A DNA stretch of 64,000 nt from Dendrobates tinctorius (GCF_039654945.1 NW_027361872.1:11842001-11906000); one strand, 5' to 3'; positions 13,771-62,127 are shown, counted from the first letter of the stretch. Translations and numbers: made by a program. Notes: generated by a model from the sequence alone, not told the origin.

Positions 13771-15276
13771 TATCTTGAGGGGTTTACAGGTCGCATCCCA
13801 CAATCATCCCATGGCGTGTGCCTCGCCACAAATCTTACTACAGTCCCAGGTAGTCATGAATTAGACCAGCGGTAGCATCACGCCCCAGCGTGTCCCATTT
13901 TGATGGAGCTGACAGAAACTGGGGTGAAATTGGTAAATGTTGCAACTTTTAAAAGGAACTTACTCCAGAATCATGATGAAATTGCTTAGATGAATTATGA
14001 CTGACTGGTCACCATAAACTGAGCCAAGTGTACAGTATGTATTGGTTCCATTGTTTTTAGGATAAATTCATGAAAGTCCATTTTTTTTTTCCTACCGGTT
14101 ATATATTTGTCAATCAGTTGAATAATTAGAAATAACATCACTAAATACACCAAAAAAAAACCTTACTTTATGCCCGAGATAAAATGTCACAGTCTCTAAA
14201 AGTGACTATTTTTTCACTCTTTACCCAAGAGAGTCCAATGTGAAGAGGGCCGTGACGTGCGCCAATTCCTAAGAGGGAGCCAAGGTGGTTAGCTGGTGGT
14301 TCAGAACGGCTTTTTTATGAAGTAGAAAGTGATATCTCAGGCCCTGGAGAAATGATACCTGAGCTGCTAATTCTTTATGCTATGTGAAGCTTGTTCATCT
14401 ATATACAACGCTGCTCGCATCTCTTCCCAACGATGCCACCGCTGACACGGTCCGGTATGTTTGCACTATGTACGGTATATTACTATATATATTATGAAGA
14501 GCTAATTACTTTTGTGTTCCTTCAATAAAATCCCCGTTACTAAGAAATACAAGAAAGAAAATAGAAACAAGAAATCGAATCCCAAAACCAAGACGTGACC
14601 AAGAGACATCCCTGGTGTTTATTACACACCATTTTGTGGTAGCAGTAAGTCCTGAAATTAGTAGTAATTTAGTCAACTGAATTAATGAAACTAAAGAGGT
14701 TGTCCAGGCATATGCTATCCACAGGATAGGTCATCAATGTGCTGCCCGTCACCCGTTATTAGCCCTGGCGGCATCAAATCTAAGTATTGAGCGGAGCTGA
14801 TCAGTAAAGTGTAGCGGCCGCTGGCAAGAAAAGCCCGTCAGGTTCCTGTTCTTTTCCAATTACTTCTTTTTTTTTTCTGGCGGTATTCTTTACAACAGTT
14901 TTTTTATTTTCATTATTCCACTTGGAAATGACCAACAATCGCGTCACAAGGAGTAATGGATTGATAGTATCTTGCCATCAGATTAATATTAGGGATGTCA
15001 CTTAATAGGGACACAGAGTTAAGAAAATAATAGTGCACATAGAGAGGTAAGGTTCTAGAGTTTGGTACCATCTTGACTGGGTACACCTTGGTGTAGTGCG
15101 ATGGATTTTACCCTTTTTTTAATCTAAGGGGCAACGTTTCTCCTTGTGGAGATAACAAGATAGGCCTGGCATGTCAGCGTAAGGAGACTTCATAGAATCA
15201 TAGAATCATAGAATCGTAGAGTTGGAAGGGACCTCCTGGGCCATCTGGTCCAACCCCCTGCTCAGAGCAGGATTCG

Positions 15277-18191
15277 CTAAATCATCCCAGTCAGATGTCT
15301 GTCCAGCCTCTGTTTGAAGACTTCCATTGAAGGAGAACTCACCACTTCTCGTGGCAGCCTGTTCCACTCATTGATCACTCTAACTGTCAAAAAGTTTTTT
15401 CTAATATCTAATCTGTGTCTCTTCCCATTCAGTTTCATCCCATTGCTTCTAGTCTTTCCTTGTGCAAATGAGAATAAAGTTGATCCTTCTACAATGTGAC
15501 AGCCCTTTAGATATTTGTAGACAGCTATTAAGTCTCCTCTCAGTCTTCTCTTTTGCAAACTAAACATTCCCAAATCCTGCAACCTTTCCTCATAAGACAG
15601 GGTTTGCAGACCGGTCTCCATTCTGGTCGCTCTTTTCTGAACTTGCTCCAGTTTGTTGATGTCTTTTTTAAAATGTGGTGCCCAAAACTGGACACAATAT
15701 TCCAGATGAGGTCTGACCAAAGAGGAGTAGAGGGAAATAATGACTTCACGTGATCTAGACTGTATGCTTCTGTTAATACATCCTAGAATTGCATTTGCCT
15801 TTTTTGCTGCTGCATCACACTGTTGACTCATATTCAGTCTGTGATCTATTAGTATACCCAAGTCTTTTTCACATGTGCTGTCACTTAGCCCTATTCCTCC
15901 CATTCTATATATGCTTTTTTCATTTTTATTGCCCAGATGTAGTACTTTGCATTTCTCCCTGTTAAAAACCATTCTGTTAGTTGCTGCCCACTTCTCCAGT
16001 TTATTTAAATCTTTTTGAATCATCTCTCTCTCCTCTCTAGTATTAGCTATCCCTCCTAGCTTTGTGTCATCAGCAAATTTAATCAGTTTACCCTCAATTC
16101 CTTCATCTAAATCGTTGATAAAGATGTTGAACAATACAGGGCCCAGGACAGAGCCCTGTGGTACCCCACTTGAGACATTCTTCCAAGTGGATGTGCAGCC
16201 ATTTACGACCACTCTTTGGGTCCGATCACTAAGCCAGTTATGAATCCACCTAACAGTTGCCTTGTCCATTCCATACTTAGTCATTTTTTCAATAAGGATT
16301 GTATGAGAGACTTTGTCAAATGCTTTGCTGAAGTCAAGATATACTATATCTACAGCATTTCCTTGATCCACCCAATCAGTGATACCGTCATAGAAGGAAA
16401 TTAAGTTAGTCTGACATGACTTATCAGTTACAAACCCATGCTGACTCTGTTTAATCACTTCATTCTTATCCAGGTATTGACATACATGTTGTTTAATAAT
16501 TTGTTCAAAGATCTTTCCTGGTATAGAAGTCAGACTCACCGGCCTATAGTTGCCTGGGTCCACCTTCTTCCCCTTTTTGAAGATAGGAACAACATTTGCT
16601 CTTCTCCAGTCTTCTGGCACTTCTCCTGTTCTCCAAGAATTTTCAAAGATTATGGAGAGGGGTTCAAAAATTTCTTCTGCTATCTCCTTCAGTACTCTGG
16701 GGTGTAATTCATCTGGACCTGGAGACTTGAATTCATTTAGGTTAGCCAAGTGTTTCCTCACTATCTTTCTGTTTATAGATATCCTGGATTCTTCTATTCC
16801 CTTAATAGGACAGTGAATAACAGTTGATGTTGCATTTCCTTTCTGAGAGAAAACAGATGCAAAATAGGAATTTAAAAGTTCAGCCTTCTCAACATCCTGT
16901 CTTACCATTTCATCATTTTCATCCTGTAAAAATACTATAGCATCTTTGACTTTTCTTTTACTTTTGACATATCCCCAAAATCCTTTATTATTGCTTTTGA
17001 CATCTCTTGCAAGCCTCAGTTCATTTTCAGCTTTAGATAATCTGATTTGTGCCCTGCAGGTTCTGCAGACAGCATTATATTCTTCTTTAGATATGCCTCC
17101 CTCTTTCCATTTTATAAACATTTTTTTCTTCCTTTTTAGCATGTGCTTAAGTTCTGTGTTCATCCATCCTGGTTTCCTTAAATGCTTCCTATTCTTCCCT
17201 CTTTTCGGAATTGTTAACAACTGTGCATTGAGAATTTCATTTTTCAAGATTTCCCATCCTTCCTGGACATTTTTGTCTTTAAGGATATCCAGCCATTGGA
17301 TCCCTCCAATTCTCTTTCTGAATCCCTTAAAATCTGCCTTTCTGAAATCTAACCTTGACGTCTGAGTCTTCACAGGTCTTCCGCCTCTAGTTATCCAAAA
17401 TTCTAAAATAGCATGGTCGCTACCTCCTAGGGTCCCAGCCACTTTTACCTCCTCAACCATTTCCTCCCTGTTTATAAGGATTAGATCCAAGGTAGCAGTT
17501 CCCCTTGTTTTCTCCCTTACCTTTTGGAAGATAAAGTTGTCAGCAAGAGAGGATAAGAATTTCCTTGACCTGTTAGTTTTGCCTGAGAGAGATTCCCAAC
17601 AAATGTCTGGATAGTTGAAATCTCCCATGACAACTATGTCATATTTTTTGGAGAACTTGGCCATTTGATGCATAAAGAGTTCATCTATATCTTCGGCTTG
17701 CACAGGCGGCCTGTAGTAAATGCCTACAATGGTGTCCTTTCCATTGTTCTGTCCTTGTATTCTTACCCAAACAGTTTCCACAGAACTCCCAGTCTCTGAA
17801 GCTTCAATCTCTGTGCAGATATACGCGTTTCGAACATACAATGCGACACCTCCTCCTCGTTTATCAAGTCTGTTTCTTGCAAATAAGTTGTATCCTTCTA
17901 GTCTTGTATTCCAATCATGTGTATAGTCCCACCAAGTTTCAGTGATTCCAATGACATCATATTTCTTTTCCTGTGTTAGTAGTTCCAATTCTCCTTGTTT
18001 GTTGCCCATGCTTTGTGCATTAGTATAGAAACATTTTAGTTTGTGATTGGTTTCTCTTTCTCCAATATTTTTATTAATTAGATTCTTTCGTCTTTGTTCT
18101 TCCTTTCCACATCTAATAGCAGAGTTCTCAATAGCATTTGTCAGGTGTATGGCTTTTTCTGGTCTTTTGCTTCCCTTCCCATGTTGTTCTA
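15277..18191 (-). CDS. CR1 ORF2: APE endonuclease plus reverse transcriptase
   Basis: 910-aa ORF from Met 18009, with the frame open upstream through LKCFYTNAQS into the ORF1 end. Motifs ITETWW, GDFNYPDI, SDH, PGPD, YRPVSLTS, GVPQGSVLGP and FADD. Confidence 0.95.
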
Positions 18192-19187
18192 GTTTAAAGC
18201 TCTCCTTACAAGTGTAGCAAGGTGACTTCCAAATACATGCTTTCCAGTCTTCGTAAGGTGCACCCCATCTCTAGCAAGTAGTCCATCGTATAAGTAGTTC
18301 ACTCCGTGATCCAGAAATCCAAATCGTTGCTGACGGCACCATCGACGTAGCCAGTTGTTCACCTGCAGAATCTTATTCCACCTCCTTGTTCCATGGCCAT
18401 CCACTGGGAGGATGGAAGAGAAGACCACCTGCGCTCCCAGTTCTTTCACTTTCTTGCCTAAGTCTTCAAAGTCTCTGCAGATGGTTTCCAGGTCGTTTCT
18501 TGCGGTGTCATTTGTCCCCACATGTAGTAGCAGGAATGGGTAGTCATCTGTAGGTCTGAAGAGTCCTGATATCCTGTCAGACACATCTTTAATTTTTGCA
18601 CCTGGAAGACAGCACATTTCTCTTGTAGTTATATCCGGTCTGCAGATAGCGGCCTCTGTTCCTCTCAACAGGGAATCCCCCATGACCACCACTCTCCGTT
18701 TCTTCTTCACAACATTTTTCTTTCTCCATCCAGGAGGACTCTGAAGGCGTACAAGGTTGCTGTTTGTTGGCAGAGTCTTATCCTGATGTATTTCTTCATC
18801 GTTTTCCTGCGTGAGAGCCTGGTACTGGTTTCTGAGCAGTATGGGTGCTGACTGCCTCCTGATCCTCCTGCTTCTCTGGGTCACATGTCTCCATTCCTCT
18901 GTTTCTTCAGGTGCACTTCGAATTTCTTCTCTTTCTGTAACATGAAGAGATAATTCTGCTCTGTCCAAGAACTCTTCACCTTCCTTAATGATCTTCAACG
19001 TAGCTAACCTCTCTTCGAGATTTTGCAACTTTTCCTCCAACAGGGACACAAACTTGCATTTGTGGCATGTGAAGTTTGGCTTTTCCACTGGTAAATCTGT
19101 GAACATGTAGCAAGAAATGCAGCTCACCAAATGACTCCTGGCCTCTTCCATCTTGAGATTTCTTAAAAACGATGAAAGATGAGCCAA
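18189..19187 (-). CDS. CR1 ORF1: Cys zinc finger, coiled coil and SGNH/GDSL esterase domain
   Basis: CISC...CHKC, a leucine heptad, GDSLLRG, HVGTND, DGVHL and the C-terminal RALN typical of CR1 ORF1. Confidence 0.9.
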   Translation of the reverse strand: MAHLSSFLRNLKMEEARSHLVSCISCYMFTDLPVEKPNFTCHKCKFVSLLEEKLQNLEERLATLKIIKEGEEFLDRAELSLHVTEREEIRSAPEETEEWRHVTQRSRRIRRQSAPILLRNQYQALTQENDEEIHQDKTLPTNSNLVRLQSPPGWRKKNVVKKKRRVVVMGDSLLRGTEAAICRPDITTREMCCLPGAKIKDVSDRISGLFRPTDDYPFLLLHVGTNDTARNDLETICRDFEDLGKKVKELGAQVVFSSILPVDGHGTRRWNKILQVNNWLRRWCRQQRFGFLDHGVNYLYDGLLARDGVHLTKTGKHVFGSHLATLVRRALN

Positions 19188-28429: not shown

Positions 28430-30440
28430 TTTAGGGACCACCTCACATTTGAAGTGAGTTTGGGGGGTCAATATGACAGAAAATACCCAAAATTGACACC
28501 ATTCTAAAAACTGCACCTCTCAATGTACTCAAAACCACATTCAAGAAGTTTATTAACCCTTCAGGTGCTTCACATGAATGAATGGAATATGGAAGGAAAA
28601 AATAAACATTTAACTTTTTTTCACAAACATTTTACTTCAAAACCATTTTTTTTACTTTCACAAGTGTAAAAAGAGAAAATGAACCACTAAATTTTTTGTG
28701 CAATTTCTCCCAAATACGCCAATACGCCGTATGTGGGGCTAAACCACTGTTTGAGCACACGGCAGAGCTCAGAACGGAAGGAGTGCCGTTTGACTTTTTC
28801 AATGCAGAATTGGCTGGAATTGAGATCGGATGCCATGTCGCATTTGGAGAGCCCCTGATGTACCTAAACAGTGGCAACCCCCCACAAGTGACCCCATTTT
28901 GGAAACTAGACCCCCCAAGGAACTTATATAGATGTGTGGTGAGCACTTTGAACCCCCAAGTGTTTCAGTAAAGTTTATAATGTAGAGGCGTGAAAATAAA
29001 AAAATCATTTTTTTTCCACAAAAATGATCTTTTAGCCCCCAATTTTTATTTTCACAAGGGTAACAGGATAAATTGGACCCTAAGAGTTGTTGTCCAATTT
29101 GTCCTGAGTATGCTGGTACGCCATATGTTGGAGAAAACTACTGTTTGGGCACACGGTGGGGCTCGGAAGGGAAGTAGTGACGTTCTGAAATGCAGACTTT
29201 GATGGAATGGGCTGTGGGTGTCATGTCGCGTTTGCAGAGCCCCTGATGTACCTAAACAGTGGAAACCCCACACAAGTGACCCCATTTTGGAAACTAGACC
29301 CCCCAAGGAACTTATCTAGATGTGTAGTGAGCACTTTGAACCCCCAAGTGTTTCAGTAAAGTTTATAATGTAGAGGCGTGAAAATAAAAAAATCATTTTT
29401 TTTTTCCACAAAAATGATCTTTTAGCCCCCAATTTTTATTTTCACAAGGGTAACAGGAGAAATTGGACCCTAAGAGTTGTTGTCCAATTTGTCCTGAGTA
29501 CGCTGGTACGCCATATGTTGGAGAAAACTACTGTTTGGGTACACGGTGGGGCTCGGAAGGGAAGTAGTGACGTTCTGAAATGCAGACTTTGATGGAATGG
29601 TCTGTGGGTGTCATGTCGCGTTTGCAGAGCCCCTGATGTACCTAAACAGTGGAAACCCCACACAAGTGACCCCATTTTGGCAACTAGACCCCCCAAGGAA
29701 CTTATCTAGATGTGTGGTGAGCACTTTGAACCCCCAAGTGTTTCAGTAAAGTTTATAATGTAGAGGCGTGAAAATAAAAAAATCATTTTTTTTCCACAAA
29801 AATGATCTTTTAGCCCCCAATTTTTATTTTCACAAGGGTAACAGGAGAAATTGGACCCTAAGAGTTGTTGTCCAATTTGTCCTGAGTATGCTGGTACGCC
29901 ATATGTTGGAGAAAACTACTGTTTGGGCACACGGTGGGGCTCGGAAGGGAAGTAGTGACGTTCTGAAATGCAGACTTTGATGGAATGGTCTGTGGGTGTC
30001 ATGTCGCGTTTGCAGAGCCCCTGATGTACCTAAACAGTGGAAACCCCACACAAGTGACCCCATTTTGGCAACTAGACCCCCCAAGGAACTTATCTAGATG
30101 TGTGGTGAGCACTTTGAACCCCCAAGTGTTTCAGTAAAGTTTATAATGTAGAGGCGTGAAAATAAAAAAATCATTTTTTTTCCACAAAAATGATCTTTTA
30201 GCCCCCAATTTTTATTTTCACAAGGGTAACGGGAGAAATTGGACCCTAAGAGTTGTTGTCCAATTTGTCCTGAGTCCTGAGTACGCTGGTACCCCATATG
30301 TGGGAGAAAACTACTGTTTGGGCACACGGTGGGGCTCGGAAGGGAAGTAGTGACGTTCTGAAATGCAGACTTTGATGGAATGGTCTGCGGGCGTCATATT
30401 GCATTTACAGAGCCCCTGATGTACCTAAACAGTGGAAACC
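28430..30440. repeat. ~389-bp tandem repeat (about 5 units)
   Basis: The anchor ccccaaggaactta recurs at about 28913, 29302, 29692 and 30080; the ORF track shows repeated near-identical ORFs. Confidence 0.92.
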
Positions 30441-30444
30441 CCCA

Positions 30445-30598
30445 ATTCTAATTCCAACCCTAACCCCAACGCACCCCTAACCCTAATCTCAGCCCTAACC
30501 ATAACCCTAACCACAAACCTAACACCAACACACCCATAACCTTAATCCCAGCCCTAGCCCTAGCCCTAACCCTAGCCCTAACCCTAACCCTAACCCCT
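30445..30598 (+). repeat. Degenerate telomere-like (CCCTAA/CCCTAG)n tract
   Basis: Directly visible hexamer array. Confidence 0.9.
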
Positions 30599-31496
30599 GC
30601 ATTTTTTTTTTTACTTTTTTTTTTTATTTTTGTCACAAGATCGCTGCCCTGCGATCTGACTCATAGTAACGCCACTTCACCTCTGATCATCTGTCAGTGT
30701 GAGATCAGAGGAGAAGCAGCGTTACTATGTGACAAGATCGCTGCCTGGCACATAATAACGCGACTTCTCCTCTGATCTCACAATGACAGATGATCAGAGG
30801 TGAAGCAGCGTTACTGTGTGACAAGATCGCTGCCTGGCACAGCTGTGCCAGGCAGCGATCTAGTCACACAATAACGCTGTTTCACCTCTGATCAGCTGTC
30901 AGTGTTAGATCAGAGGGAGAAGCCGCGTTACAATGAGGGAGATCGCCGGGAAACAAGCAGCTTTCCCAGCGATCGCTCCCATTGGCTGCTGTGACGCTGA
31001 CGTCATCGGGACCTGAACCAATCAGGTCTCGATGACGTCGGGGGTCCCAGCATGCATTGCGCACCGGGATCCCCGCGTTGTAAGGTATGTGGGGGTCCCG
31101 GGGGGCACAAAACCGCCGACAGTAGATAAACGTCGGCGCTGCACAAAGCCCAGCAAGCGCCAACGTTTATCTACTGTGGGCGGTCGTGAAGAGGTTAAGC
31201 TGGACATTACATTTATATATCGTCCCACTGCTGGGTGTCCATGGTTGGACCTCGGGTTATGCTTGGCCCTCATTCTTATTGAGGTCATTTTTGACACATG
31301 GTAATTTTTGACTACAGGTTAGGACCGTCCTGACTGGGTACACCTTGCTGATGGTGGGATGGCTTTTACACTTTTTTTTATTTATTTTTTTTTTTTTAAC
31401 AAAAACAGTGTTTTGCTAAGTACGCTATATTTATATGCACTAATGCTTTTTACTTACTTATAGGAGGGTATAAGTTAATTTCTATCTTAGGTTTTG

Positions 31497-33707
31497 TGTC
31501 ACAGGGATACCATGACAGACGGACCATTAGATTGCAGCGTCTGGTTTCAAAAACTCCTGCACTGAATAGAACAGGTTCGCAATATTATTAAACAGTGCAG
31601 GTTTCTTCCTTGGTGGCAGTGAAAGGGTTAATCAATTCAGTTGCTCTCTTGGAGCTCTTCAACCTGGATTGACTCAGCTGTTTAGTGTTGACCACTCCCC
31701 TCTGCTATAAATGCTCGCCACTGGCACTTGGGAGTTGCCAGTGATATTTTTTACTGCGTGGTTAGGAATTGGAGGTGAAGTTCATGTTTGTAGTCCCCGT
31801 TCTTCAGCGCATGCAATTTTCATCCATAATTCTGCTCCTTCAACAGGAATCGTTCTTCAGGAGTAAAATGACGAGGAATGGTTTTCTTCATCTACGCAAG
31901 GTGTTCTTAATAATTTAAGGAGGATGGGTTCCAAACATAAGTGTCATGATCCAGGATGGGGTTTCGCTTTCACCCGTTCTGGTCAGACTGGGGGTTAATT
32001 GTTCTGCCTCTCTCTGGCAGAGGGCGGCTATTTAATGCTCACTGGACCTAGGTCCGGTGTCAGTTATACTCCTGCCCTCGGCTGAGTTAGTTAACCTCTT
32101 GTGTACGTGTGCCTTGTGCCTGATAACTTGTTGCTTGTTTGGTTGTGATCCGGTTCTGTCCCTGTTACGAGTTCTGCCTGCCCCTCTTGTACCGCACCCT
32201 CTCTCGTGTATGACTCTCTGCTCGTCCCTTTGGTACCGCACCGCCCTCTTGAGTATGACCTTTGGCTTTGTCTGACCTCCCGTCTGTTTATCCCACCTGT
32301 ACCTCGTTTGCCCGTACTGTGGAAGACCTCCGTTTTGCCCACTCTGAGTTTTCTATCTTCTCTGAAAGCTGGACGCTAAGCCCCGCCCCTTGCAGTCAGA
32401 TGACCGTAGGTCCTGTGCCGGCTTGCTAACCTTCAGCGTTCAGGTCCTGTGCATCTGTACTTTCTGGCTGTTCCTGTCCCCAGGGGTCCCTACAGTGAGG
32501 GTAAGTCCCTGCTCAGTGGAGGCTGTACACCGGCGCTGTCAGGATCCTGATAATAAGAGTATGGCTGATCGGAAACACTTGGTGGGTCTGGACCCGAGTG
32601 CTAGTGATTTGGTGTGGTTGTCCTTGGAGAACAATCAGTTGAAGGTTCCTTCCTGGAAACTGGCACCCAGTTTCATCGACCTCTATAAAATAGTTGCCGT
32701 TAATTCAGTAGCGTTTCGCCTTGCTTTACCACCTACTTTCAAGATTCATAACGTGTTCCACCAATCACTTCTCAAAACATACACTTTTCCTCTGAACTAT
32801 CTTCACCAGCACCTTTCCGAGTCATTGTTGATAGGAATCTGGAATTCAAGATAGCAAAGATTATCGATTCTCGTGTTGTACACCGGTCTCTTCAATATTT
32901 GGTACATTTGAAGGGTTACAGTCCTGGGGAGAGAATGCGGGTACCAGTGTCGGATGTGCAAGTGATCAGGTTCGTCCAGTTTTATCAAGCTTCACATCCA
33001 GACAAAGCTGATTCTGAGATTCTGGAGGTCCCTCTTAGGAAGGGGGGTACTGTCATGAAGATACCGCAACAGAGAGGGGCCAGAACAGAAGTTTTCGGCA
33101 TCTGGTTACACAAACTCCTGCACTGATTTGAACTGTTATACATTCTTATTACACAGTGCAGGTTTCTTCCTTGCTTGCAGTGCAAGGGTTAATCAGTTCG
33201 GTTGATCTCCCGGAGCTCTTCAACCAGGCTTGTCTCAGCGATTTAGTGTTGGCCATTCCCCTCTGTTATATATGCTCATCACTGACACTTGAGAATTGCC
33301 AGTGATAGTTCTTACTGCCTGGTTAGAAGTTGGAGGTGAAGTTCGTGTTGGGGAGTAGGCGTGGTTCAGGAGATTTTTGTGTTCATCCTAATCCCCTATT
33401 TGGCTTGACCTTCCTATACCAACCCTGTGTTCAACTATGTTGTTTGGTGAGTGTATTTTGTATGATTGTAGTTTTTATTTATCCATGTCCATCTCTCTTG
33501 TTTGTCTGTCAGTGTTATCCTATACACTTCAGCATCACACTTCTCGGGGTGGAGAAGGGAACAAATAACGGATAATATAGGAGTACAGCAATTCACGTGA
33601 CCCCGACGTCTCCACCTTAGCGAGTAATCCGGGGGGACAGAGATAAACTAAGTGCCCCAAGATCGAGGAATTGGGTATTCACCCAAAGTCCCTACTCACT
33701 ACAAGAC
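31497..33707 (+). mobile_element. Internally deleted Gypsy (chromovirus-like) LTR retrotransposon
   Basis: Related LTRs start at 31497 (tgtcacagggatacc) and 33051 (tgtcatgaagatacc); PPT aggaaggggggtac lies before the 3' LTR. Integrase C-terminal and chromodomain remnants (KLAPSF..YKI, IHNVFHQSLLK, QYLVHLKGY) are at 32560-33030. Confidence 0.8.
31942..32552 (+). mobile_element. Solo LTR nested in the Gypsy element
   Basis: TGTCATGATCC...CCTGATA; 5-bp TSD ATAAG. Confidence 0.78.
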
Positions 33708-33870
33708 AGTTTGTCTGTTTAATGGCCCGTGTGAACATGCTCCTACATGTTGCATGTAGAACAGCTTATACTACAGCTCATTTCTTTTGGTTTTGATAAG
33801 ATTCAATGTAGAGTGGACAGAGGAGGTAGGAGCTAGAGATAGAACTTTTCCTCCGCCTACATAGAAACTT

Positions 33871-35140
33871 TTGTGTTTTTTGCTTTTTGTTTTCTCTGGT
33901 TAATGGTCATGTGTTAACATGCACTTACATTGTGCATACACATTAACTTACTTTTCTCAGTTCAGATTTGTTTTTTATTCATTTCATTGTGCATTCAGTG
34001 CATATAGGGGTGTGACCGCCCTCTTTCTGAGCTGGGAAAGCCATCCAGTCTGGCCTAAGCTGTTACTAGTGGTTCAGCCGCTCGACCCTTATTCACATTC
34101 ACGCCACTTGGCAAGTGAAAAGGTTTTAAATACTAGAGCAGGGACTGTCCCACAAGGGTTGCCGTGACGTGGCGGGATGGCTTGTACATTATTTTGATCA
34201 AAATTATGTTTACTAAATACCCTTATTATTATTATTACCTTTATGCATTATTTGCAGTATATTTTTTACTTTTTAGTTCAGGATATTTGTGTTTTTTGCT
34301 TTTTGTTTTCTCTGGTTAATGGTCATGTGTTAACATGCACTTACATTGTGCATACACATTAACTTACTTTTCTCAGTTCAGATTTGTTTTTTATTCATTT
34401 CATTGTGCATTCAGTGCATATAGGGGTGTGACCGCCCTCTTTCTGAGCTGGGAAAGCCATCCAGTCTGGCCTAAGCTGTTACTAGTGGTTCAGCCGCTCG
34501 ACCCTTATTCACATTCACGCCACTTGGCAAGTGAAAAGGTTTTAAATACTAGAGTAGGGACTGTCCCACAAGGGTTGCCGTGACGTGGCGGGATGGCTTG
34601 TACATTATTTTGATCAAAATTATGTTTACTAAATACCCTTATTATTATTATTACCTTTATGCATTATTTGCAGTATATTTTTTACTTTTTAGTTCAGGAT
34701 ATTTGTGTTTTTTGCTTTTTGTTTTCTCTGGTTAATGGTCATGTGTTAACATGCACTTACATTGTGCATACACATTAACTTACTTTTCTCAGTTCAGATT
34801 TGTTTTTTATTCATTTCATTGTGCATTCAGTGCATATAGGGGTGTGACCGCCCTCTTTCTGAGCTGGGAAAGCCATCCAGTCTGGCCTAAGCTGTTACTA
34901 GTGGTTCAGCCGCTCGACCCTTATTCACATTCACGCCACTTGGCAAGTGAAAAGGTTTTAAATACTAGAGTAGGGACTGTCCCACAAGGGTTGCCGTGAC
35001 TTGGCAAGATGGCTTGTACATTATTTTGATCAAAATTATGTTTACTAAATACCCTTATTATTATTACCTTTATGCATTATTTGCAGTATATTTTTTACTT
35101 TTTAGTTCAGGATATTTGTGTTTTTTGCTTTTTGTTTTCT
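33871..35140 (+). repeat. 416-bp unit x3 plus 25 bp, flanked by a 10-bp TSD
   Basis: Units start at 33871, 34287, 34703 and 35116; ATAGAAACTT occurs at 33861-33870 and 35141-35150. Confidence 0.93.
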
Positions 35141-35963
35141 ATAGAAACTTATCAGTAGCAACTGTCATTTTCTATCTCAGTAATATAAAATCTGTCTTTA
35201 AGGAACACAAATTTTACCTGTAAATTGAGAATTCTGAAAAGGAATGATTAGTACTGGTGGAGAAAAAAAGCAGATTGCACTAATGAAATATATTGTAAAG
35301 TTCTTTATTTTCCATTGTAATATTAATTTGTGAAATAAAAATTAGAACGACTGTTACTCTTTAAGTGATTGCGGACGACCCCATGACTCAAAATGTCAGG
35401 GTGGTCCACATGTTTTGGAAAGTCATTGCAGAGTCAGCAACTGCACTTAGACAATGCAGCTGCAAGGACCGGGCAGCCAGCTGTCAGACAGGAGGATTCA
35501 CTCAGAGTCCCCCAGAGAGAACAGAGATGGTTTATCATCATATCTGCCTTCATAGCCGCTTTATGCAGCGGTTAGAAATGTCATGCAAGATCAGCTCAGA
35601 AAGCCAATTTTGCCCTGTAACTATGGCTATTTTATGCCAGCACCAGCTACAGCGAAAATCAAGAATTAAAAGAATGTATTTAAAAGTTGAAATGCCTATT
35701 CAAGATCCTTTATGACCATAAGGGGAAAACAATGTGTGAATTAAATGGAAAAAAGAAAGAAAAGCAGGAAAACAAAATTTTAAAAAAGCCACTGCTAGTC
35801 TAATTTACCATTTTTAGCACCATCCCGTACAAAAAACAAAAATGTATCCAATATGTAAAAAATGGTACTTAAAGTGAGCGTAATACAATTTTAAAAAAAA
35901 GTATCTTAGGTATCCTTTATGGCCCTAATATCTGAAAAAAAAGAAACAAAAAGTAAAACATAT

Positions 35964-38790: not shown

Positions 38791-39605
38791 GCTAATTAAT
38801 TTATATTTTATTGGAAAAAATGGTTAAAATGGGAGGCAGGGTGCCGACTTATCAATTTTTAATTTTAATGGTGGGTTTCACAGTGCTTAATTATACAGTA
38901 CAAATATATTGTGGTGCCGCGGTAGCACCGTACACAGTGATGAGGCAGTGACCCAAAAAGTTTCAACACAAAAGTCTATTTACTGTGTTACTTCACACAT
39001 TAAAGTCTAATTCCCACAATTGCATAATATTCAGAATCCACTTCGGATAAGTGCATATAACCTCAGTGCATATTATCAGTGTTAAATTCACACCAGTTCA
39101 TAGCACTACACGGCTTTGTATCACAGTCCCTAAACATGCCGGACTTCACCTTGTCCAGTTTCCATGGGCGACTGCACGCCGTGCCAATGTCTCTCACAGC
39201 CTCCTTTAGCCTGCAGTCACGACACACGCTAGTCCACCTCTGACTAGTTCCCGTGGGTGTCCTGCACCACTGTATCACAGTCTCTACTCACAGCCGTACA
39301 CAGACATTGACATCCTCCTGTCTGCAGCTGTGACACATGCCAGTCCTCCTTCGGGCACAGGACAGCCTAACCTCCGGGTCTCCTCCGGGCACAAGACCTG
39401 TCCACATACGAGACCAGTCGCCATGGACGGCAGCACTGCTGTGTACACTGTGGGGTACTAGGCCTCACTCTGGCCCTGACACACCTGAGACTCACTAAGA
39501 ACTCACTAACCCTTTCCTGCAGGGTTTTTAACATAGCAACCTGTGGCTTTCAGCCACCTGGAAAACCTGGGTCCGGAATGGAATAGACTGCAACACTAAC
39601 ATACT

Positions 39606-40219
39606 AGAGAAAACAAAAAGCAAAAAACACAAATAAAAAGTAAAAAATAAACTGCAAATAATGCATAAAGGTAATAATAATAAGGGTATTTAGTAAACAT
39701 AATTTTGATCAAAATAATGTACAAGCCATCCCGCCACGTCACGGCAACCCTTGTGGGACAGTCCCTACTCTAGTATTTAAAACCTTTTCACTTGCCAAGT
39801 GTCGTGAATGTGAACAAGGATCTGACCCATTAGTAAAAGCATAGGCCAGACTGGATGGTTTTCCCAGATCAGAAAGAGGGCGGTCACACCCTTATATGCA
39901 CTGAATGCACAATGAAATGGATAAAAAAAACTGAAGTCTGAACTGAGAAAATAAATTAATGTGTATGCACAATGTAAGTGCATATTAACACATGACCATT
40001 AACCAGAAAAAAACAAAAAGCAAAAAACACAAATAAAAAGTAAAAAATAAAAATTGCAAATAATGCATAAAGGATCCCTCGATCCTTGTTCACATTCACG
40101 TCACTTGGCAAGTGCAAAGGTTTTAAATACTAGAGTAGGACTGTCCCACAAGGGTTGCCGTGACGTGGCAGGATGGCTTCTACATTATTTTGATCAAAAT
40201 TATGTTTACTAAATACCCT
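39606..40219. repeat. Second locus of the 416-bp family: reverse copy (39606-40073) joined to a forward fragment (40081-40219)
   Basis: High identity to the units at 33871-35140; inserted in an LTR-like element that starts at about 38910. Confidence 0.88.
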
Positions 40220-40400
40220 ACGGCCTTCATACACCTCCTTGCATATCCTGGGGAGACTACACAGCGACCCCCTACATGTAACATCGGTCACTGCTTCACC
40301 ATTGCTATCCCAGCTATGCTTGTGACCGTAATGCATTCCCATAGCCTCAATACAACTCCGTGTGTATCCTGGAGAGAACACACAGTGCCCCCCAGCTGTA

Positions 40401-40538
40401 NNNNNNNNNNNNNNNNNNNNNNNNNNNNNNNNNNNNNNNNNNNNNNNNNNNNNNNNNNNNNNNNNNNNNNNNNNNNNNNNNNNNNNNNNNNNNNNNNNNN
40501 NNNNNNNNNNNNNNNNNNNNNNNNNNNNNNNNNNNNNN
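40401..40538. other. Assembly gap (N run)
   Basis: 138 N bases. Confidence 0.99.
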
Positions 40539-43888: not shown

Positions 43889-46800
43889 ATTAGCTTAGAT
43901 ACTCACCGATAACGGTGTTTCTCGGAACCCATGATAGCATCACGGAGAGAGGGGATCCGCCCTTCAGGGACAGGAACCTTCAGATAAAAGGGCAGTACCT
44001 CTCCTCCGCCTTCAGTTGGTTACAGAGCATCAGAGGGTCTCCAGGTTAGTTAAACAGAAATATATGCACAACATTATAATATTGCTTATTTATCAGAAGC
44101 ACCGTGCTTAAACGGAAACACTCTACAAACAGTAAAACGTGCTCACCACACTCGTGAAGGGGAGGGGAATAAGTCATGGGTTCCGAGAAACACCGTTATC
44201 GGTGAGTAACTAAGCTATTCTCTCTCACCCATGACAGCACCACGGAGAGAATTACAGAGATTGGTAGCTTAGGGAGGGACCACCGCCTGAAGGACCCTTC
44301 TCCCAAAGGTCAGGTCAGACGTAGAGGCTAGATCTAATCTATAGTGCCTGAAAAAGGTCGAAGGTGATGACCAGGTGACCGCCTTACAGATTTGTTCTAT
44401 CGATACCTCAGATCTTTCAGCCCATGAGGTCGCCATCGCTCTTGTGGAATGGGCTCTCAAACCTTCCGGGATGGTATTTCCACTGGATGAGTATGCCAGG
44501 GCAATCACATCCCTTATCCACCTTGCCAGGGTACTCTTAGATGCTTTGAGTCCCTTCCGAGGTCCCTGGAAACACACACAGAGAGAGCCTTCCTTCCAAT
44601 ATTTTTGGTGACCTCTAGATAATGTACTAGGCACCTCTTCACATCTAAGGTGTGGAATTTTTCTTCTCCCTTATTTTTAGGATTTGGGCAGAAGAAGGAA
44701 GGACTACCTCTTGGGACCTATGAAAATGTGATGACACTTTTGGTAGATAGGCCGGGTCAGGTTTTAAAATGACTCTATCCTCTAGAATTTTTGTGAAAGG
44801 AGGCCCCGCTGATAAAGCTTGCATATCGCTCACCCTGCGAGCTGATGTTAATGACACCAGAAGCACTGTTTTTAACAACAGGATTCTTAGGGATGCCGAG
44901 TGGATAGGTTCGAACGGAGGGCCTGTTAGTGTGGACAGTACAATATTCAGGTCCCACGATGGTACTCTTTGACTAGCTATTGGTCTAGATCTGGTTACGG
45001 CCTTAATAAATCTTGTCACCCAAGGATTACCTGCCACATCATGGTTATAAAGGGCGCCTAAAGCCGCTACTTGCACCTTTAATGTGTTGACCGCTAGACC
45101 CTGTTCTAGGCCCCTTTGTAGAAATTCAAAGATCTTATCAATGTGAACCCCGTCCTGATCCTTTACCCCAGAAGTGGATAAGAATTTTTTCCACGTTCTC
45201 CCATAAGCTCTCATCGTAACCGGTTTTCTATTTTTTTGTAGTGTAGTTATCAGGTTCTCGGAAAATGCTCTGTCTCTCATCAGTGCCCTCTCAAATTCCA
45301 TGCAGTTAAATGGAGATTCCCTGCCTGAGGGTGTAACACTGGGCCCTGTGATAGCAGGTCCGGGAGATGTGGTAGGATCCATGGGTCGGTTACCGAGAGC
45401 ATTCATAGCCAGGAGAACCACGTTCTTTTGGGCCAGAAGGGGGCTATTAATATCATTCTTGCTCCGTCCTTCATGACTTTACTAAGGACTGTCGGAATAA
45501 GTATTATCGGGGGAAAGGCATATGTTAGGCTCTGTGTCCATGGGAGCATGAAGGCATCCAGAGCTAGAGGATTCCCACTGGGGTCTAGGGAGCAGAAGGT
45601 TTTCACTTTTTTGTTTCTGAAGTCGGCAAACAGATCTATGTCCGGGGCCCCCGACATTTTTACAATCTGACGAAAATCAGACCACTTTAGGACCCATTCC
45701 CCTTGCCGTAATTGGGTGCGGCTCAGAAAGTCTGCTTTTTGATTCTCCGTGCCTCGGATGTGTAGCGCTGACAGAGATAGCAGGTTTGCCTCTGCTAGTT
45801 TGAGGACTCTGAGGATGTGTCCATTAGGGCTCGGGACCTCGTTCCCCCCTAGTGATTTATATAGGTTACTGTGACTCGATTGTCCGAAAATATGCGGACA
45901 TGATGATCTTTGAGCAAGGGTAGGAAGTGTTTTAACGCGTAGCCCACTGCTAAGAGCTCTTTCTGGTTTGAGGGGGCTTCTACTTTAATTCTTGACCTCT
46001 CCACGCACCCTGAGCCACCTCATGGTTCATGTCTGCTCCCCATCCTGTGGGACTGGCATCTGTAACTATGTGTGTTATTTTTGTTACCCAGGGAATCCCT
46101 TTGGAAAGGTTGTCTTGGCTTCTCCACTAGGCTAGGGAATGAGTCGTTTTTGAATTTAGGGTGATACGACCCTCTAGGTGTCCCCCCACTGCTGACTGGT
46201 TGGCTAGTACGTCCCACTGTAGATCTCTCGTGTGTAACTGAGCCCATTGGACTGCTGGCAGGCAGGCGGAGAGGGAACCCAGCAGTGACATAGCTTTCCT
46301 CCCCGATATAGGTAGGGGTCTAGTACAAGTGGGGCATTCCCTGTTCTTTTTACCCTTCTTCTTTCCCTATTAAGGATAGGAATTCTATTACAATGGTGAA
46401 CATTCACGGAGATCACTCACCCAGAAGTATGCGGCTGCAGGTACCGATTCGGGGGACGGAGTCAGGTCCTGTACAGGCTGATCTCCTTGTGGCGATTTGC
46501 TCCTTGCAGCTGACGTGCTGCGCTGCATGGAGTGACTGCTGGAACGGCCATTCCTGTCTCGTTCCTTCTGGCGATGATGGTGGTGGTGCTGCTGCTGCTG
46601 TTTAAGCTGCTGCCTAGCTTGCTGCTCCTGTTGCTGGTCGCTATCCCCCATTGTTCAGGATCACTTCCAGCCAGGAGTGTTGCTAGCCCCACCATTTTAA
46701 ATTTCCCGGCTTGTGCCGTCACCGCTCCCATCCTGCACCTCGTTCGTCGGGGAAAGCGCTCCTGCGCATGCGCCGGTTCCAGGGACCCGGAAGCCGGCTT

Positions 46801-55100: not shown

Positions 55101-55702
55101 GTAGGTAGGCATCTTTGATGACGATAGAAGCCAAGTATTCTCCCCACCCCATGGCAGATATGACTGAACGGAGAGACTCCATCTGGAAATGTCTGATCCT
55201 GATAAACTTGTTTAGGACCTTTAGGTCCAGAAAGGGCCTGACGGCCCCATCCTTTTTGGGCACCGTGAACAGGTTGGAGTAGAACCCCTGATAATTTTCG
55301 TTCTCCGGAACGGGAACAATGACTCCGCTGTGCTGGAGTAATTTTATGGCCTTGAGTAAAGCCCTTGCTCGGGCGATTACGTTGAGAGGACGGGAAAGAA
55401 AAAACCATCTTGGGGGGTATTTGATGAATTCTATCTTGTACCCCGAGGACACCAGCTCCATTACCCATGTGTCGTGTGTGACGGAGAGCCAGGCGTGGCG
55501 AAACCAAAGCAGGCGGCCGCCTACCTTGCTGAAATCGCCTTGAGATTGCCTCGAGTCATTTGGCTGCAGATCTCAGGGACCTAGGTCCTCTTGATCTGGG
55601 CTGGTGGGTACGCATTCTCCCCAATGGGTTGGCTCTATATGAGACCTGCCGATCCCTATCCTGGTTGGGATGACCTGAAGCAGCGGGAATGGTCGCTGCA
55701 GC

Positions 55703-60002: not shown

Positions 60003-60914
60003 CCACGCTATATGGTGCAGCCAGGGAGCCCGGAATGCCTAAGAATGGCGCCAGGAGCGCAGACCACGGGGGTCCGCAGGAGCCCTCCCAGCCCACCTCC
60101 TTCCATACCTCACCCCTCGACATCCATCTTCATCCTCAGGTGGGGGAGGGGGCGAAAAAAAGTTTAAGGACAGTGCAGGCACCCTAGCTCCATCTTTCCT
60201 TATAGGGGATGAGGAGAGGGACCGTCCGCCACCTTCCATCACCGCTGTCTGGCATTGGTGATGCAGTGGGGGCCGCACAGACTGTTCGCAGGCCTCTGTA
60301 CAGCCTAGGGTTTCTCTACATTAGGGTGGTCAAGGCTCAGTCCGGCATCATATCCCACGTAGCAGGAACGGGTACGTGGAGGCGACACTTGCACGTGCTC
60401 GCCCGTTGTTGGTTTGGGGAAATCAGACCCTTTCAAGACGATGCGTTGCCCCTGTCTTATCTTCATGGAAAAAATGAGAGAGTCTGGAAAAAAAGACCAG
60501 ACGTGTGCCTCCAATGAACACTAAGCAAAAACTGATTCCGCCCGCAACCAGGGCGAGGGTGTATACGGCGGAGGAGGAGCTAACCTCTTTTTTTCACTTA
60601 GCATCAGCCTCCAGGCGGCAGAAGCATACACCCACAGTACCTGTGTCCCCCAATGAGGCAAAGGAGAAATACTTTATTTTCTGGACAATTTCAAGGGTGT
60701 CAATGACTGTATATGCTGAACAATGTGATACTTCTGTATTTACGGTAAATGTGTTGTACTGGATTTTAAGAATATTGCTTAAGAGCAAGAATGGTATAAA
60801 AAAATCAGCATTACATCTTTGCTAAATCGTAGCCTTCCAGTGACGACATTACATCCATTATTAATGTGATGCAAGCAGAGGCCAGTGGTAACGATGGGCA
60901 TGATGTAGTCATTA

Positions 60915-61350
60915 TGTTTCTGTCTTTGTTTTTTTCTGTTCAGTGGCCAGTGTGAACGTGTGCTTACACGCTGCATGCACACCAGTTTATATCCCAGTTC
61001 ATACCTTTTCGGGGTTTTTTTGCCTGTTTGCATCATGCGCATATAAAGGTATGGCATGCCTTTCCTTTGAGTTGGGCATTATATTGAAGAGGTCTCCCTT
61101 GGCTGTGTATCCACTAGTTGGGCCCAGTCCTTCTCAGCCCTTATCTACATGCATGTCACTTGACAAATGGTAAGGCTTTTAATATTAGAGTTAGGACTGT
61201 CCCAATTACAGTCACCGTGGGATGGCTTTCCCATTTTTTTTTTTAAATCAAAAAACATGTCAACTAATTACCGCATATTATTTTCATGCTGTATGCTTCT
61301 TATTTATTTACTGCAGGGTATTTAATCAATATGTTTCTGTCTTTGTTTTT
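60915..61350 (+). repeat. Highly diverged member of the 416-bp structured family
   Basis: Colinear blocks cagttca, gcatata, tgagttggg, cactag, cacttgacaaatg, aaggcttttaatattagag and ggactgtccc...gggatggctt. Confidence 0.68.
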
Positions 61351-62127
61351 TTTTGTGGTGTAACCATTGCAGACAAACTACCGAAGCGGCACAGCTTGAG
61401 CAATAAAGCATACACAAGTAATGGTTATTTTTTACATTTCCTGTATACCATTTCACGTTTGTAGGCAAAGGTCTAAAATCCTAATAACCCCTATAAAAGG
61501 GCTTTTACGATCATTAGAATTCAAGGTATATCGCAAAACTACTGCCTCTTTTCGCCAGGACCCCCATGAGGAATGTATATAGCAGTTTCATTCACAGTGG
61601 GTGGGTAGGCATCGTGCTCTATGGAGAAAACTGGAATAGCTTATGCAGTTGGGAAGAGGAAGATGATGAACACAGAACCATGTTCCTGATGTCTAGAGTG
61701 AGATTATCTTCTATTAGAAAATTAATGACTCGAGACTCCAGATTAATGTCAATTTTCAAAAAACAATACAATATCTACCGTCTGACCACAGGTGGTAGTG
61801 AAACGCGGGTCAGGTATTCTACTGCTCTATATTTTTTATAACTATGGCTAAAGGAAATTATAAGCACTAGCTTTCTCATCCTTATTCCATGAACAATCAC
61901 TTTGTGACATTAATATTATACTGAACTCCTCTTGAGCATTACAGTATCTTTATGTATCAGTTATTTCATTAATACGCTAGACCTTAATACATTATTGATT
62001 ATTTTTAAATATAATGTCTCCCATGCAGTATGTTGGTTCAATGTTATATTGATAGGTTGATGTGATTCGATCCTCTGCAGCTTTATGACCAATGCCAAGA
62101 CACTACGTTTAATATAAGGGCATTTAA

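What the first reader, a model, noticed from the sequence alone, without database searches (positions are those of the whole stretch)
33955..34183. Helices of the 416-bp family are preserved across very diverged copies: a conserved structured RNA
Seen: the stem UCUCAGUUCAGA (33955-33966) / UCUGAGCUGGGA (34026-34037) becomes CCCAGUUCA / UGAGUUGGG at 60993-61076. After an invariant GCAUAUA, the hairpin GGGGUG-ugac-CGCCCU becomes AAAGGUAU-ggc-AUGCCUUU (61045-61063). CACUU-ggc-AAGUG follows. A terminal GGACYGUCCY...GGGAUGGCUU stem with a variable interior recurs at 34142, 31322, 61194 and weakly at about 15065. The G-U pairs work only on the plus strand, which points to RNA-level selection and gives the sense. 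Inference: a possible unrecognised ribozyme or RT-recruiting element.
Basis: partly seen in the sequence, partly recalled or inferred. Interest (0 to 1): 0.75.

Follow-up and report, generated by a model that had tools for sequence, protein, structure and literature searches.

The report
Ribozyme-less Penelope-type frog repeat, folded
The 416-base repeat is a very abundant, non-coding jumping element, most likely copied in by Penelope-type retrotransposon machinery; one 83-base stretch of its RNA keeps the same fold in very diverged copies, but nothing supports a new self-cutting RNA.

Summary

- **5' domain, 33955-34037.** This long closing helix plus the GGGGUG/CGCCCU hairpin is the only real structural signal. 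In a shuffle scan of the two most diverged copies it is the sole outlier: z about -6 on the plus strand, -3 to -4 on the minus strand. It carries two G-C to A-U double changes. With only two lineages, the formal covariation counts do not beat their controls.
- **Other helices.** CACUU/AAGUG is not conserved. The terminal GGACYGUCC/GGGAUGGCUU stem is conserved, but it changes only by one-sided CpG-decay steps and scores no better than neighbouring sequence.
- **What the family is.** Its insertion anatomy is that of Penelope-like elements: head-to-tail multimers, a 25-31 bp "tail", a flipped 5'-truncated copy, 5' truncation and a 10-bp target duplication.
- **Ribozymes.** It has no hammerhead, no conserved HDV-like fold and no Rfam match.

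My best reading is a hammerhead-less, non-autonomous Penelope-type retroelement. Its conserved fold starts about 60 nt downstream of the reverse-transcription start sites and may recruit the enzyme; that role is inferred. Earlier notes of this scan describe similar ribozyme-less Penelope-type units elsewhere in this genome.

The parts
33861..33870 (.). Left target-site duplication ATAGAAACTT
   Evidence: Exact 10-bp repeat of 35141-35150
33871..35140 (+). Young insertion of 3.05 head-to-tail units (416, 416 and 413 bp). Units 1 and 2 differ at one base.
   Evidence: TRF period 416, 3.1 copies, 99%; BLAST and nhmmer; unit comparison
35116..35140 (+). The 'tail': the first 25 bp of a fourth unit, giving the terminal redundancy. 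Its two ends mark the two alternative 3'-end sites, A and B.
   Evidence: Same feature at 61325-61355 and at about 39603-39633 (minus strand). The 31 kb copy ends at site A without a tail.
35141..35150 (.). Right target-site duplication ATAGAAACTT
33955..34037 (+). Conserved 83-nt domain: closing helix H1, a small hairpin ending in the invariant GCAUAUA, and hairpin H2. It repeats at 34371-34453 and 34787-34869.
   Evidence: MFE and centroid structure of u34; consensus-fold z -6 to -8 on the plus strand, the only outlier of the unit; pair counts; covariance model hits
34142..34183 (+). Terminal stem GGACUGUCC / GGAUGGCUU with an inner hairpin UGCC-GUGACGU-GGCG
   Evidence: Pattern found 5 times against 0 expected; RNAalifold consensus; only one-sided changes in the outer stem; z about -3 on both strands
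39603..40075 (-). Copy of 1.1 units, 91.5% identical to the 34 kb unit, with a tail at its 3' end (low coordinates)
40076..40242 (+). Flipped, 5'-truncated partial copy (unit positions about 210-377), abutting the 5' end of the minus-strand copy
   Evidence: No TSD was found for this composite. An N run at 40401-40538 lies close by and was left alone.
60905..61355 (+). Old copy of 1.07 units, about 70% identical, with a 31-bp tail
   Evidence: nhmmer E 1e-25; sequence; profile search
60993..61076 (+). The H1/H2 domain in the diverged copy (CCCAGUUCA / UGAGUUGGG; AAAGGUAU-ggc-AUGCCUUU)
   Evidence: covariance model 75.8 bits
31196..31479 (+). 5'-truncated copy (from unit position about 165) that ends at site A without a tail; it carries the terminal stem at 31322-31365
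33710..33819 (+). Old partial copy (head region and H1 5' arm only), lying just upstream of the site where the young trimer inserted
   Evidence: nhmmer E 6e-8 to 1e-10; alignment
15046..15126 (+). Decayed fragment holding the terminal stem region
   Evidence: nhmmer E 3e-7 against the 31 kb copy; alignment

Best explanation
**What it is.** The 416-bp family is a very high-copy, non-coding, non-autonomous retroelement of a frog-like genome. It is most likely mobilised in trans by Penelope-like element (PLE) reverse transcriptase/GIY-YIG endonuclease. That makes it a hammerhead-less counterpart of the animal 'non-LTR retrozymes', which derive from PLE pseudo-LTRs.

**Shown here.**
- The copies are homologous.
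- Insertions are head-to-tail multimers or 1.07-1.1-mers.
- Insertions end at one of two fixed sites 25-31 nt apart (the 'tail').
- Copies are 5'-truncated, or carry a flipped 5'-truncated copy at the 5' side.
- The young trimer has a 10-bp AT-rich target duplication.
- The transcribed sense is therefore the window's plus strand for the 34 kb, 61 kb and 31 kb copies.
- An 83-nt domain, starting about 60 nt downstream of the distal 3'-end site, keeps a three-helix fold on the plus strand between copies only about 70% alike.

**Inferred.** A multimeric plus-strand RNA is bound by a PLE protein. Reverse transcription then starts internally at site A or site B, as shown in vitro for the Anolis PLE. 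The conserved H1/H2 domain, possibly with the conserved head hairpin upstream of it, would be part of the RNA surface that recruits the enzyme. The terminal stem is more likely conserved sequence of uncertain role.
For: **Homology.**

**Insertion anatomy.**
- Tandem of 3.05 units with a 25-bp tail and the TSD ATAGAAACTT.
- A tail also at 61325-61355 and at about 39603-39633. The 31 kb copy ends tail-less at site A and is 5'-truncated.
- A flipped partial copy at 40076-40242 abuts the 5' end of the 40 kb copy.

These are the features the literature gives as the PLE signature and says are not seen with LINE-type insertion: partial tandems, a 30-40 bp tail, and an inverted 5'-truncated copy (PMC8557442). 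The tail equals the stretch between two internal RT start sites, and multimeric RNA is the template (PMC11167929). Animal tandem retrozymes, averaging 316 bp in amphibians, are pLTR-derived non-autonomous PLE sequences (bioRxiv 10.64898/2026.07.22.740005).

**Abundance.** More than 3,300 Logan contigs of one DNA run lie on two units, with very high summed depth. Two organisms hold the family.

**Fold.**

**No coding capacity.** The ORFs are frame-inconsistent, and a protein word search found nothing.
Against: - No autonomous PLE lies in this window. The ORFs scanned (8 of the 16 of at least 150 aa) are CR1 and DIRS-like or match no family, so similarity of the unit to a PLE pLTR or 3' region could not be tested.
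- The tail is 25-31 bp, a little short of the published 30-40 bp.
- Only one of the three composite insertions has a detectable TSD.
- The fold rests on two independent lineages. The pair-count controls are not exceeded.
- The u61 full-length MFE does not use H1/H2.
- An old partial copy (33710-33819) lacks H2.
- No RNA run shows that the element is transcribed.
- The invariant GCATATA(A/G/T) inside the domain could be a DNA-level TATA-like promoter signal instead.
Confidence: 0.6

Rival explanations
1. The helices are by-products. The family is a PLE-type passenger, but H1/H2 and the terminal stem are just conserved sequence blocks of the master copies that happen to be self-complementary. 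They have no RNA-level function.
For: The pair-count controls are not exceeded. Most changes are one-sided transitions. The terminal-stem variants CCGUC, CUGUC and CCAUC are plain CpG decay. The column-shuffle null is biased: the median z of unrelated windows is about -1.6 to -2. The u61 MFE prefers other pairings.
Against: The H1/H2 domain is the single outlier of the scan, and only on the plus strand (z -6 against at most -3.9 elsewhere). It has two G-C to A-U double changes in a 6-bp hairpin. H1 forms with high probability in both isolated domains.
Confidence: 0.22
2. The conserved block acts at the DNA level as the element's internal promoter. The invariant GCATATA would be a TATA-like box flanked by GC-rich sequence, as in Penelope, where the pLTR holds the start site and an internal promoter.
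For: GCATATA is invariant in the two lineages that cover this region (u34/u40 and u61). Most family members read T at 34007, which gives TATAT. PLE pLTRs carry the promoter (PMC8557442).
Against: G.U pairs and the strong strand asymmetry of the consensus fold argue for RNA. A promoter does not explain compensatory changes in H2. The two roles are not exclusive.
Confidence: 0.1
3. A SINE-like element mobilised by a LINE (CR1/L2 type), with the terminal stem as the LINE RT recognition hairpin. Tandem and flipped forms would arise by template switching or twin priming.
For: An intact-looking CR1 lies in the window (15277-19187, RT plus endonuclease). Stem-loop 3' ends recruit stringent-type LINE RTs (general knowledge). 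5' inversions also arise by twin priming.
Against: - There is no tRNA-like head.
- The terminal stem lies about 130 nt from the actual 3' end.
- The family's 3' end carries no such microsatellite or poly(A) tail, unlike the CR1, which ends in an 8-bp microsatellite.
- No similarity to the CR1 was found by nhmmer.
- The two-site tail plus partial tandems are described as PLE-specific.
Confidence: 0.05
4. A retrozyme-like circular RNA with a new, unrecognised self-cleaving ribozyme in place of the hammerhead.
For: Unit-plus-a-bit multimers resemble retrozyme insertions. Hammerhead retrozyme-like repeats are noted in the same window and genome. A conserved three-way junction exists.
Against: - No Rfam ribozyme matches even at E 10, and there is no hammerhead core.
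- HDV-like descriptor hits do not clearly exceed shuffles and fall apart in u61 and u31, where P3 is deleted and P2 has no partner.
- The junction strands of the domain are U-rich and variable, not conserved as a catalytic core would be.
- The Anolis PLE needs no ribozyme cleavage to insert.
- The whole unit is only weakly structured.
Confidence: 0.03

Closest known systems
Animal non-LTR retrozymes (tandem hammerhead units, non-autonomous derivatives of PLE pseudo-LTRs; Cervera and de la Pena 2020, PMC7229834; Li, Clavereau and Pollet 2026 preprint)
   Same: A non-coding unit of a few hundred bp (amphibian mean 316 bp). Head-to-tail multimers, dispersed high-copy insertions with target duplications, and occurrence in an amphibian genome reported to be rich in PLEs.
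   Different: No hammerhead ribozyme on either strand, which is the feature that defines retrozymes. No evidence of circular RNA. Similarity to a pLTR could not be tested.
Penelope-like elements, insertion signature (Evgen'ev and Arkhipova 2005; Craig et al. 2021, PMC8557442; Frangieh et al. 2024, PMC11167929)
   Same: Partial tandems, an optional tail bounded by two alternative 3'-end sites, an inverted 5'-truncated copy at the 5' side, 5' truncation, and an AT-rich target with a TSD.
   Different: No RT/GIY-YIG ORF, so the element is non-autonomous. The tail is 25-31 bp rather than 30-40 bp. The region around the start sites is U/G-rich, whereas the Anolis start sites lie in an AC-rich stem-loop.
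Non-autonomous Chlamys elements such as MRC1 of Chlamydomonas (PMC8557442)
   Same: Hammerhead-less, non-coding passengers of PLE machinery that give pLTR-like repeats and multicopy head-to-tail insertions.
   Different: They belong to a green alga and a different PLE clade (N-terminal endonuclease). They have no sequence relation to this family, and no conserved RNA fold is described for them.

Membership tests
PLE-mobilised non-autonomous retroelement | Head-to-tail partial tandem insertions | tested here: met
   3.05 units at 33871-35140, 1.07 at 60905-61355 and 1.1 at 39603-40075
PLE-mobilised non-autonomous retroelement | Optional 30-40 bp tail, i.e. two alternative 3'-end (RT start) sites | tested here: met
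   Tails of 25-31 bp on three copies. The 31 kb copy ends at the proximal site without a tail. The tails are slightly shorter than published.
PLE-mobilised non-autonomous retroelement | Inverted 5'-truncated copy adjacent to the 5' end | tested here: met
   40076-40242 (+) abuts the 5' end of the minus-strand copy
PLE-mobilised non-autonomous retroelement | Target-site duplication of variable length at AT-rich DNA | tested here: inconclusive
   A clean 10-bp TSD for the young trimer only. None was detectable for the 40 kb and 61 kb copies.
PLE-mobilised non-autonomous retroelement | Sequence similarity of the unit to the pLTR or 3' end of an autonomous PLE of the same genome | not testable with these tools
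   No PLE was found among the 8 window ORFs scanned. Eukaryotic genome DNA outside the window is not searchable. Earlier notes report many PLEs in this genome, which I did not verify.
Retrozyme (hammerhead-bearing) | Hammerhead ribozyme (CUGANGA ... GAAA core, three stems) in each unit | tested here: not met
   No Rfam match at the gathering score or at E 10. No core motif on either strand of any copy.
Retrozyme (hammerhead-bearing) | Unit-length circular RNA | not testable with these tools
   No listed run is on record as RNA. Contigs show no informative joints.
HDV-like (delta) ribozyme | Nested double pseudoknot P1-P2-P3-P1.1-P4 conserved across copies, with G1.U wobble and a catalytic C in J4/2 | tested here: not met
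   No Rfam delta-family hit at E 10. A permissive descriptor gives hits not clearly above shuffles. The best hit, on the minus strand of the u34 lineage, starts with U.G. It loses P3 in u61 and has no P2 partner in u61 or u31.
tRNA-derived SINE | tRNA-like head with Pol III A and B boxes | tested here: not met
   ARAGORN finds nothing in 31000-35300. T4-T6 runs inside the unit would terminate Pol III.
Any Rfam family | Score at or above the gathering threshold | tested here: not met
   0 matches in the whole window

The most novel reading that the evidence does not exclude
The H1/H2 three-helix domain is a new RNA module. Hammerhead-less passengers would use it to hijack vertebrate Penelope-like reverse transcriptase, or, less likely, it is a new protein-assisted self-cleaving motif. 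Either way it would give the first defined RNA recognition element for PLE retrotransposition in vertebrate non-autonomous elements.
Probability: 0.15. Interest if true: 0.7.

Novelty: new variant of a known kind. Interest (0 to 1): 0.35.

Why it matters
How Penelope-like elements choose their RNA template is barely known. One in-vitro study shows internal RT initiation next to a protein-binding stretch. An abundant passenger RNA that has shed both the ORF and the hammerhead, yet keeps a small strand-specific fold beside the two RT start sites, would be a natural minimal substrate. It could be used to map what the enzyme recognises. It would also show that the 'retrozyme' lifestyle in vertebrates does not require a ribozyme. 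As it stands, the finding is mainly a clean annotation of an ordinary, if very successful, repeat family.

Tried and rejected
- **Rfam:** no match at the gathering score on the whole window or at E 10 on both diverged copies; only chance-level hits to bacterial families.
- **Hammerhead core regex:** none on either strand of any copy.
- **HDV-like descriptor:** too permissive. The one attractive minus-strand candidate in the u34 lineage is not conserved.
- **Metagenome scan for the terminal-stem pattern:** 119 stretches, all chance matches; none is homologous by nhmmer. No deeper alignment could be built this way.
- **The 82-aa ORF of the unit as a handle to fetch contigs:** the protein word search found nothing. 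The ORF is not frame-conserved, so it is taken as non-coding.
- **Public runs:** all are Logan contigs and none is on record as RNA. They show very high copy number and presence in two organisms, but no strand, no ends and no GT..AG joints.
- **Covariance model of the domain:** it finds only its own training copies in the window, so the fold is not shared with the window's other repeats.
- **tRNA head:** none.
- **Whole-unit rod-like or viroid-like folding:** weak, z -2.3 and -1.3.
- **TSDs for the 40 kb and 61 kb copies:** not found.

Full report
**What is there**

The window is vertebrate-like DNA. Earlier notes of the scan call it a frog, poison-frog-like genome. It is full of interspersed repeats.

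Positions 33871-35140 hold 3.05 head-to-tail copies of a 416-bp non-coding unit. TRF reports period 416 and 99% matches. Units 1 and 2 differ at one base. The array sits between two exact copies of ATAGAAACTT, at 33861-33870 and 35141-35150.

BLAST and nhmmer find further members:
- a minus-strand copy of 1.1 units at 39603-40075, 91.5% identical;
- a flipped partial copy at 40076-40242 on the plus strand, abutting it;
- an old copy of 1.07 units at 60905-61355, about 70% identical, E 1e-25;
- a 5'-truncated copy at 31196-31479, E 1e-11 against the 61 kb copy;
- a partial old copy at 33710-33819;
- a fragment at 15046-15126, E 3e-7 against the 31 kb copy.

**Check of the helices**

All quoted strings are at the quoted places.

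- **H1** (33955-33966 with 34026-34037) has 12 bp in the young unit and 9 bp in the 61 kb copy. The differences are one-sided (U.G to C-G, G-C to G.U) or break a pair.
- **H2** (34007-34012 with 34017-34022) becomes an 8-bp hairpin at 61045-61063. It has two G-C to A-U double changes and one G.U to A-U change.
- **CACUU-ggc-AAGUG** has a C x A mismatch in the 61 kb copy and does not exist in the 31 kb and 15 kb copies.
- **The terminal stem** pattern occurs five times against none expected, and 95% of its cells pair. Every change in its outer helix is on the 5' arm. The series is CCGUC (31 kb), CUGUC (34, 40 and 61 kb) and CCAUC (15 kb). That is what deamination of a CpG on either strand produces, so the preserved wobble pairing needs no selection.

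The observed number of pairs with double changes is reached in 63 of 500 shuffles, and the covariation score in 108 of 500. Structures slid by 1-3 columns give 2-3 double-change pairs too.

I then ran a second kind of test, comparing the RNAalifold consensus energy with column-shuffled versions of the same alignment.
- For the H1/H2 domain the plus strand gives z -6.5 (34 kb against 61 kb copy) and -8.3 (three copies), with 0 of 300 shuffles as good. The minus strand gives -4.1 and -5.3.
- In a scan of the whole unit in 105-column windows, the three windows that hold the complete domain are the only outliers on the plus strand. They give z -5.6 to -6.0 with consensus energy -18.3 kcal/mol, against -7.2 on the minus strand.
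- All other windows stay between +0.4 and -3.9 on the plus strand.
- The null is somewhat biased (median z about -1.6 to -2), so the terminal stem's z of about -3 on both strands is not remarkable.

Other fold results:
- Single-sequence folding of 33955-34183 gives z -3.4 on the plus strand and -1.1 on the minus strand.
- The 61 kb copy gives -1.4 and -0.2.
- In the isolated 61 kb domain H1 forms with probability 0.74-0.99, and a fold containing H2 lies 1.5 kcal/mol above the optimum.
- The family-wide variant table from a DNA run lists seven variable positions inside the domain. Four are unpaired, two keep a pair (G.U to A-U, G-C to G.U) and one breaks a pair. This is consistent with the fold but weak.

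Verdict on the observation: there is a real, plus-strand-specific conserved fold of 83 nt. It is supported by only two lineages. The other two helices are not demonstrably structural.

**What the family is**

The insertion anatomy is the informative part.

All copies with an intact 3' side end at one of two sites. Site A is the unit boundary, between GGRTAT..TAAT and the T-rich start. Site B lies 25-31 nt further on.
- The 34 kb, 40 kb and 61 kb copies end at B, so they carry a short terminal redundancy.
- The 31 kb copy ends at A.

The 5' sides lie at site A (34 kb, 61 kb), are truncated (31 kb), or are joined to a flipped 5'-truncated copy (40 kb).

The literature gives exactly this set as the signature of Penelope-like elements: partial tandems, an optional 30-40 bp tail, and an inverted 5'-truncated copy at the 5' end. 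[quoted passage not shown]

The only biochemical study shows four relevant things (PMC11167929):
- A PLE protein uses multimeric RNA as template.
- It starts reverse transcription internally at two adjacent sites, and the spacing between them is the tail.
- The RNA it needs surrounds those sites.
- Hammerhead cleavage is not needed for insertion.

A 2026 preprint shows that amphibian tandem 'non-LTR retrozymes' (mean 316 bp) are derivatives of PLE pseudo-LTRs.

The family is very abundant. More than 3,300 contigs of one 2-Gb DNA run lie on two units, with summed depths of 1e5 and more. Small runs of two organisms hold it.

It is non-coding. The 82-aa ORF of the young unit changes frame relative to the 61 kb copy, and a protein word search found no relative.

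**Ribozyme question**

- Rfam finds nothing at the gathering score in the window, and nothing but chance-level bacterial hits at E 10 on either diverged copy.
- No copy has a CUGANGA...GAAA core on either strand.
- Earlier notes of the scan report HDV-like folds in roughly 400-nt units of this genome, so I ran a permissive delta-type descriptor. Its hits do not clearly exceed shuffles.
- The one attractive candidate is on the minus strand of the young lineage: P1 UAAGGGU/ACCCUUG, P2 AAGCCAUCC/GGAUGGCUU, P3 GCC/GGC. It starts with U.G instead of G.U. It loses P3 through a 9-nt deletion in the 61 kb copy, and it has no P2 partner in the 61 kb and 31 kb copies.
- The minus-strand consensus fold is weak, -10.4 kcal/mol over 278 columns.
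- The junction strands of the H1/H2 domain are U-rich and variable, not what a catalytic core looks like.
- A covariance model of the domain finds no other instance in the window.

**Most likely mechanism**

Shown: homology, anatomy, polarity, the conserved fold, and the absence of known ribozymes.

Inferred: plus-strand multimeric transcripts of source arrays are bound by the protein of an autonomous PLE. The endonuclease cuts AT-rich DNA, and reverse transcription starts inside the RNA at site A or B and runs towards the 5' end. Occasional priming from the other DNA strand gives the flipped copy. The H1/H2 domain begins 60 nt 3' of site B. Together with the conserved head hairpin between them, it is the best candidate for the protein-binding surface.

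The invariant GCAUAUA inside the domain could in addition, or instead, be a TATA-like promoter signal. This would match Penelope, whose pLTR holds the promoter.

**Limits**

- No autonomous PLE lies among the window ORFs I scanned. Of the 16 ORFs of at least 150 aa, I scanned eight; they are CR1, DIRS-like or match no family. Frog DNA outside the window could not be searched, so the partner is unnamed.
- The metagenome scan returned only chance matches.
- No RNA data were available.
- The N run at 40401-40538 was left untouched.

**Relation to earlier notes of the scan**

Notes on other pieces of this genome describe non-coding tandem-plus-flipped units of about 404-429 bp and 540 bp with TSDs of 9-15 bp. 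Follow-ups on three of them (units of about 420, 540 and 542 bp) concluded 'ribozyme-less Penelope-type tandem retroelement insertion'. I reached the same reading here from the anatomy and the papers. I could not check whether those units are the same family.

Noticed in passing
61170-61316; 31301-31463; 15047: Older copies carry a full set of splice-like signals that the young subfamily lacks. These are donor-like GGTAAGG/GGTAATT, branch-like CTAAT/CTAAG, and a pyrimidine tract plus AG. Together they bound a 147-163 nt 'intron' that holds the terminal stem and the T run. The 34 kb and 40 kb copies have GA or GC in place of the donor GT. PLEs are known to keep introns through retrotransposition (PMC8557442).
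   Followed up: partly
34039-34047 with 34175-34183: In the young lineage only, AAGCCAUCC pairs perfectly (9 bp) with the 3' arm of the terminal stem. The partner is absent from the 61 kb and 31 kb copies.
   Followed up: partly
33710-33870: The young trimer inserted about 40 bp downstream of an old partial copy of the same family. This could be chance, or the homing into own sequence proposed for the Anolis PLE.
   Followed up: no
28834-30442 and 30456-30596: Another non-coding tandem repeat (388-bp unit, 4.1 copies, 97%), directly followed by about 24 degenerate telomere-like AACCCT repeats.
   Followed up: no
52519-55507 (-) and 44645-45421 (-): ORFs with a reverse transcriptase domain and weak, sub-threshold matches to the SAM-like N-terminal domain of phage-type integrases. 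This suggests DIRS-like retroelement remains.
   Followed up: partly
15190-19187 (-): A CR1-type LINE with a 910-aa endonuclease-RT ORF. It ends in a (TTCTATGA)n microsatellite on the minus strand at 15190-15220, right next to the 15 kb fragment of the family, which lies on the opposite strand.
   Followed up: partly
56255-57362: A 31-bp satellite array (CATTATCCTGTATGGAGCATTATATGGGGCC and variants) with higher-order periods of 62, 93 and 172 bp.
   Followed up: no
   Followed up: no
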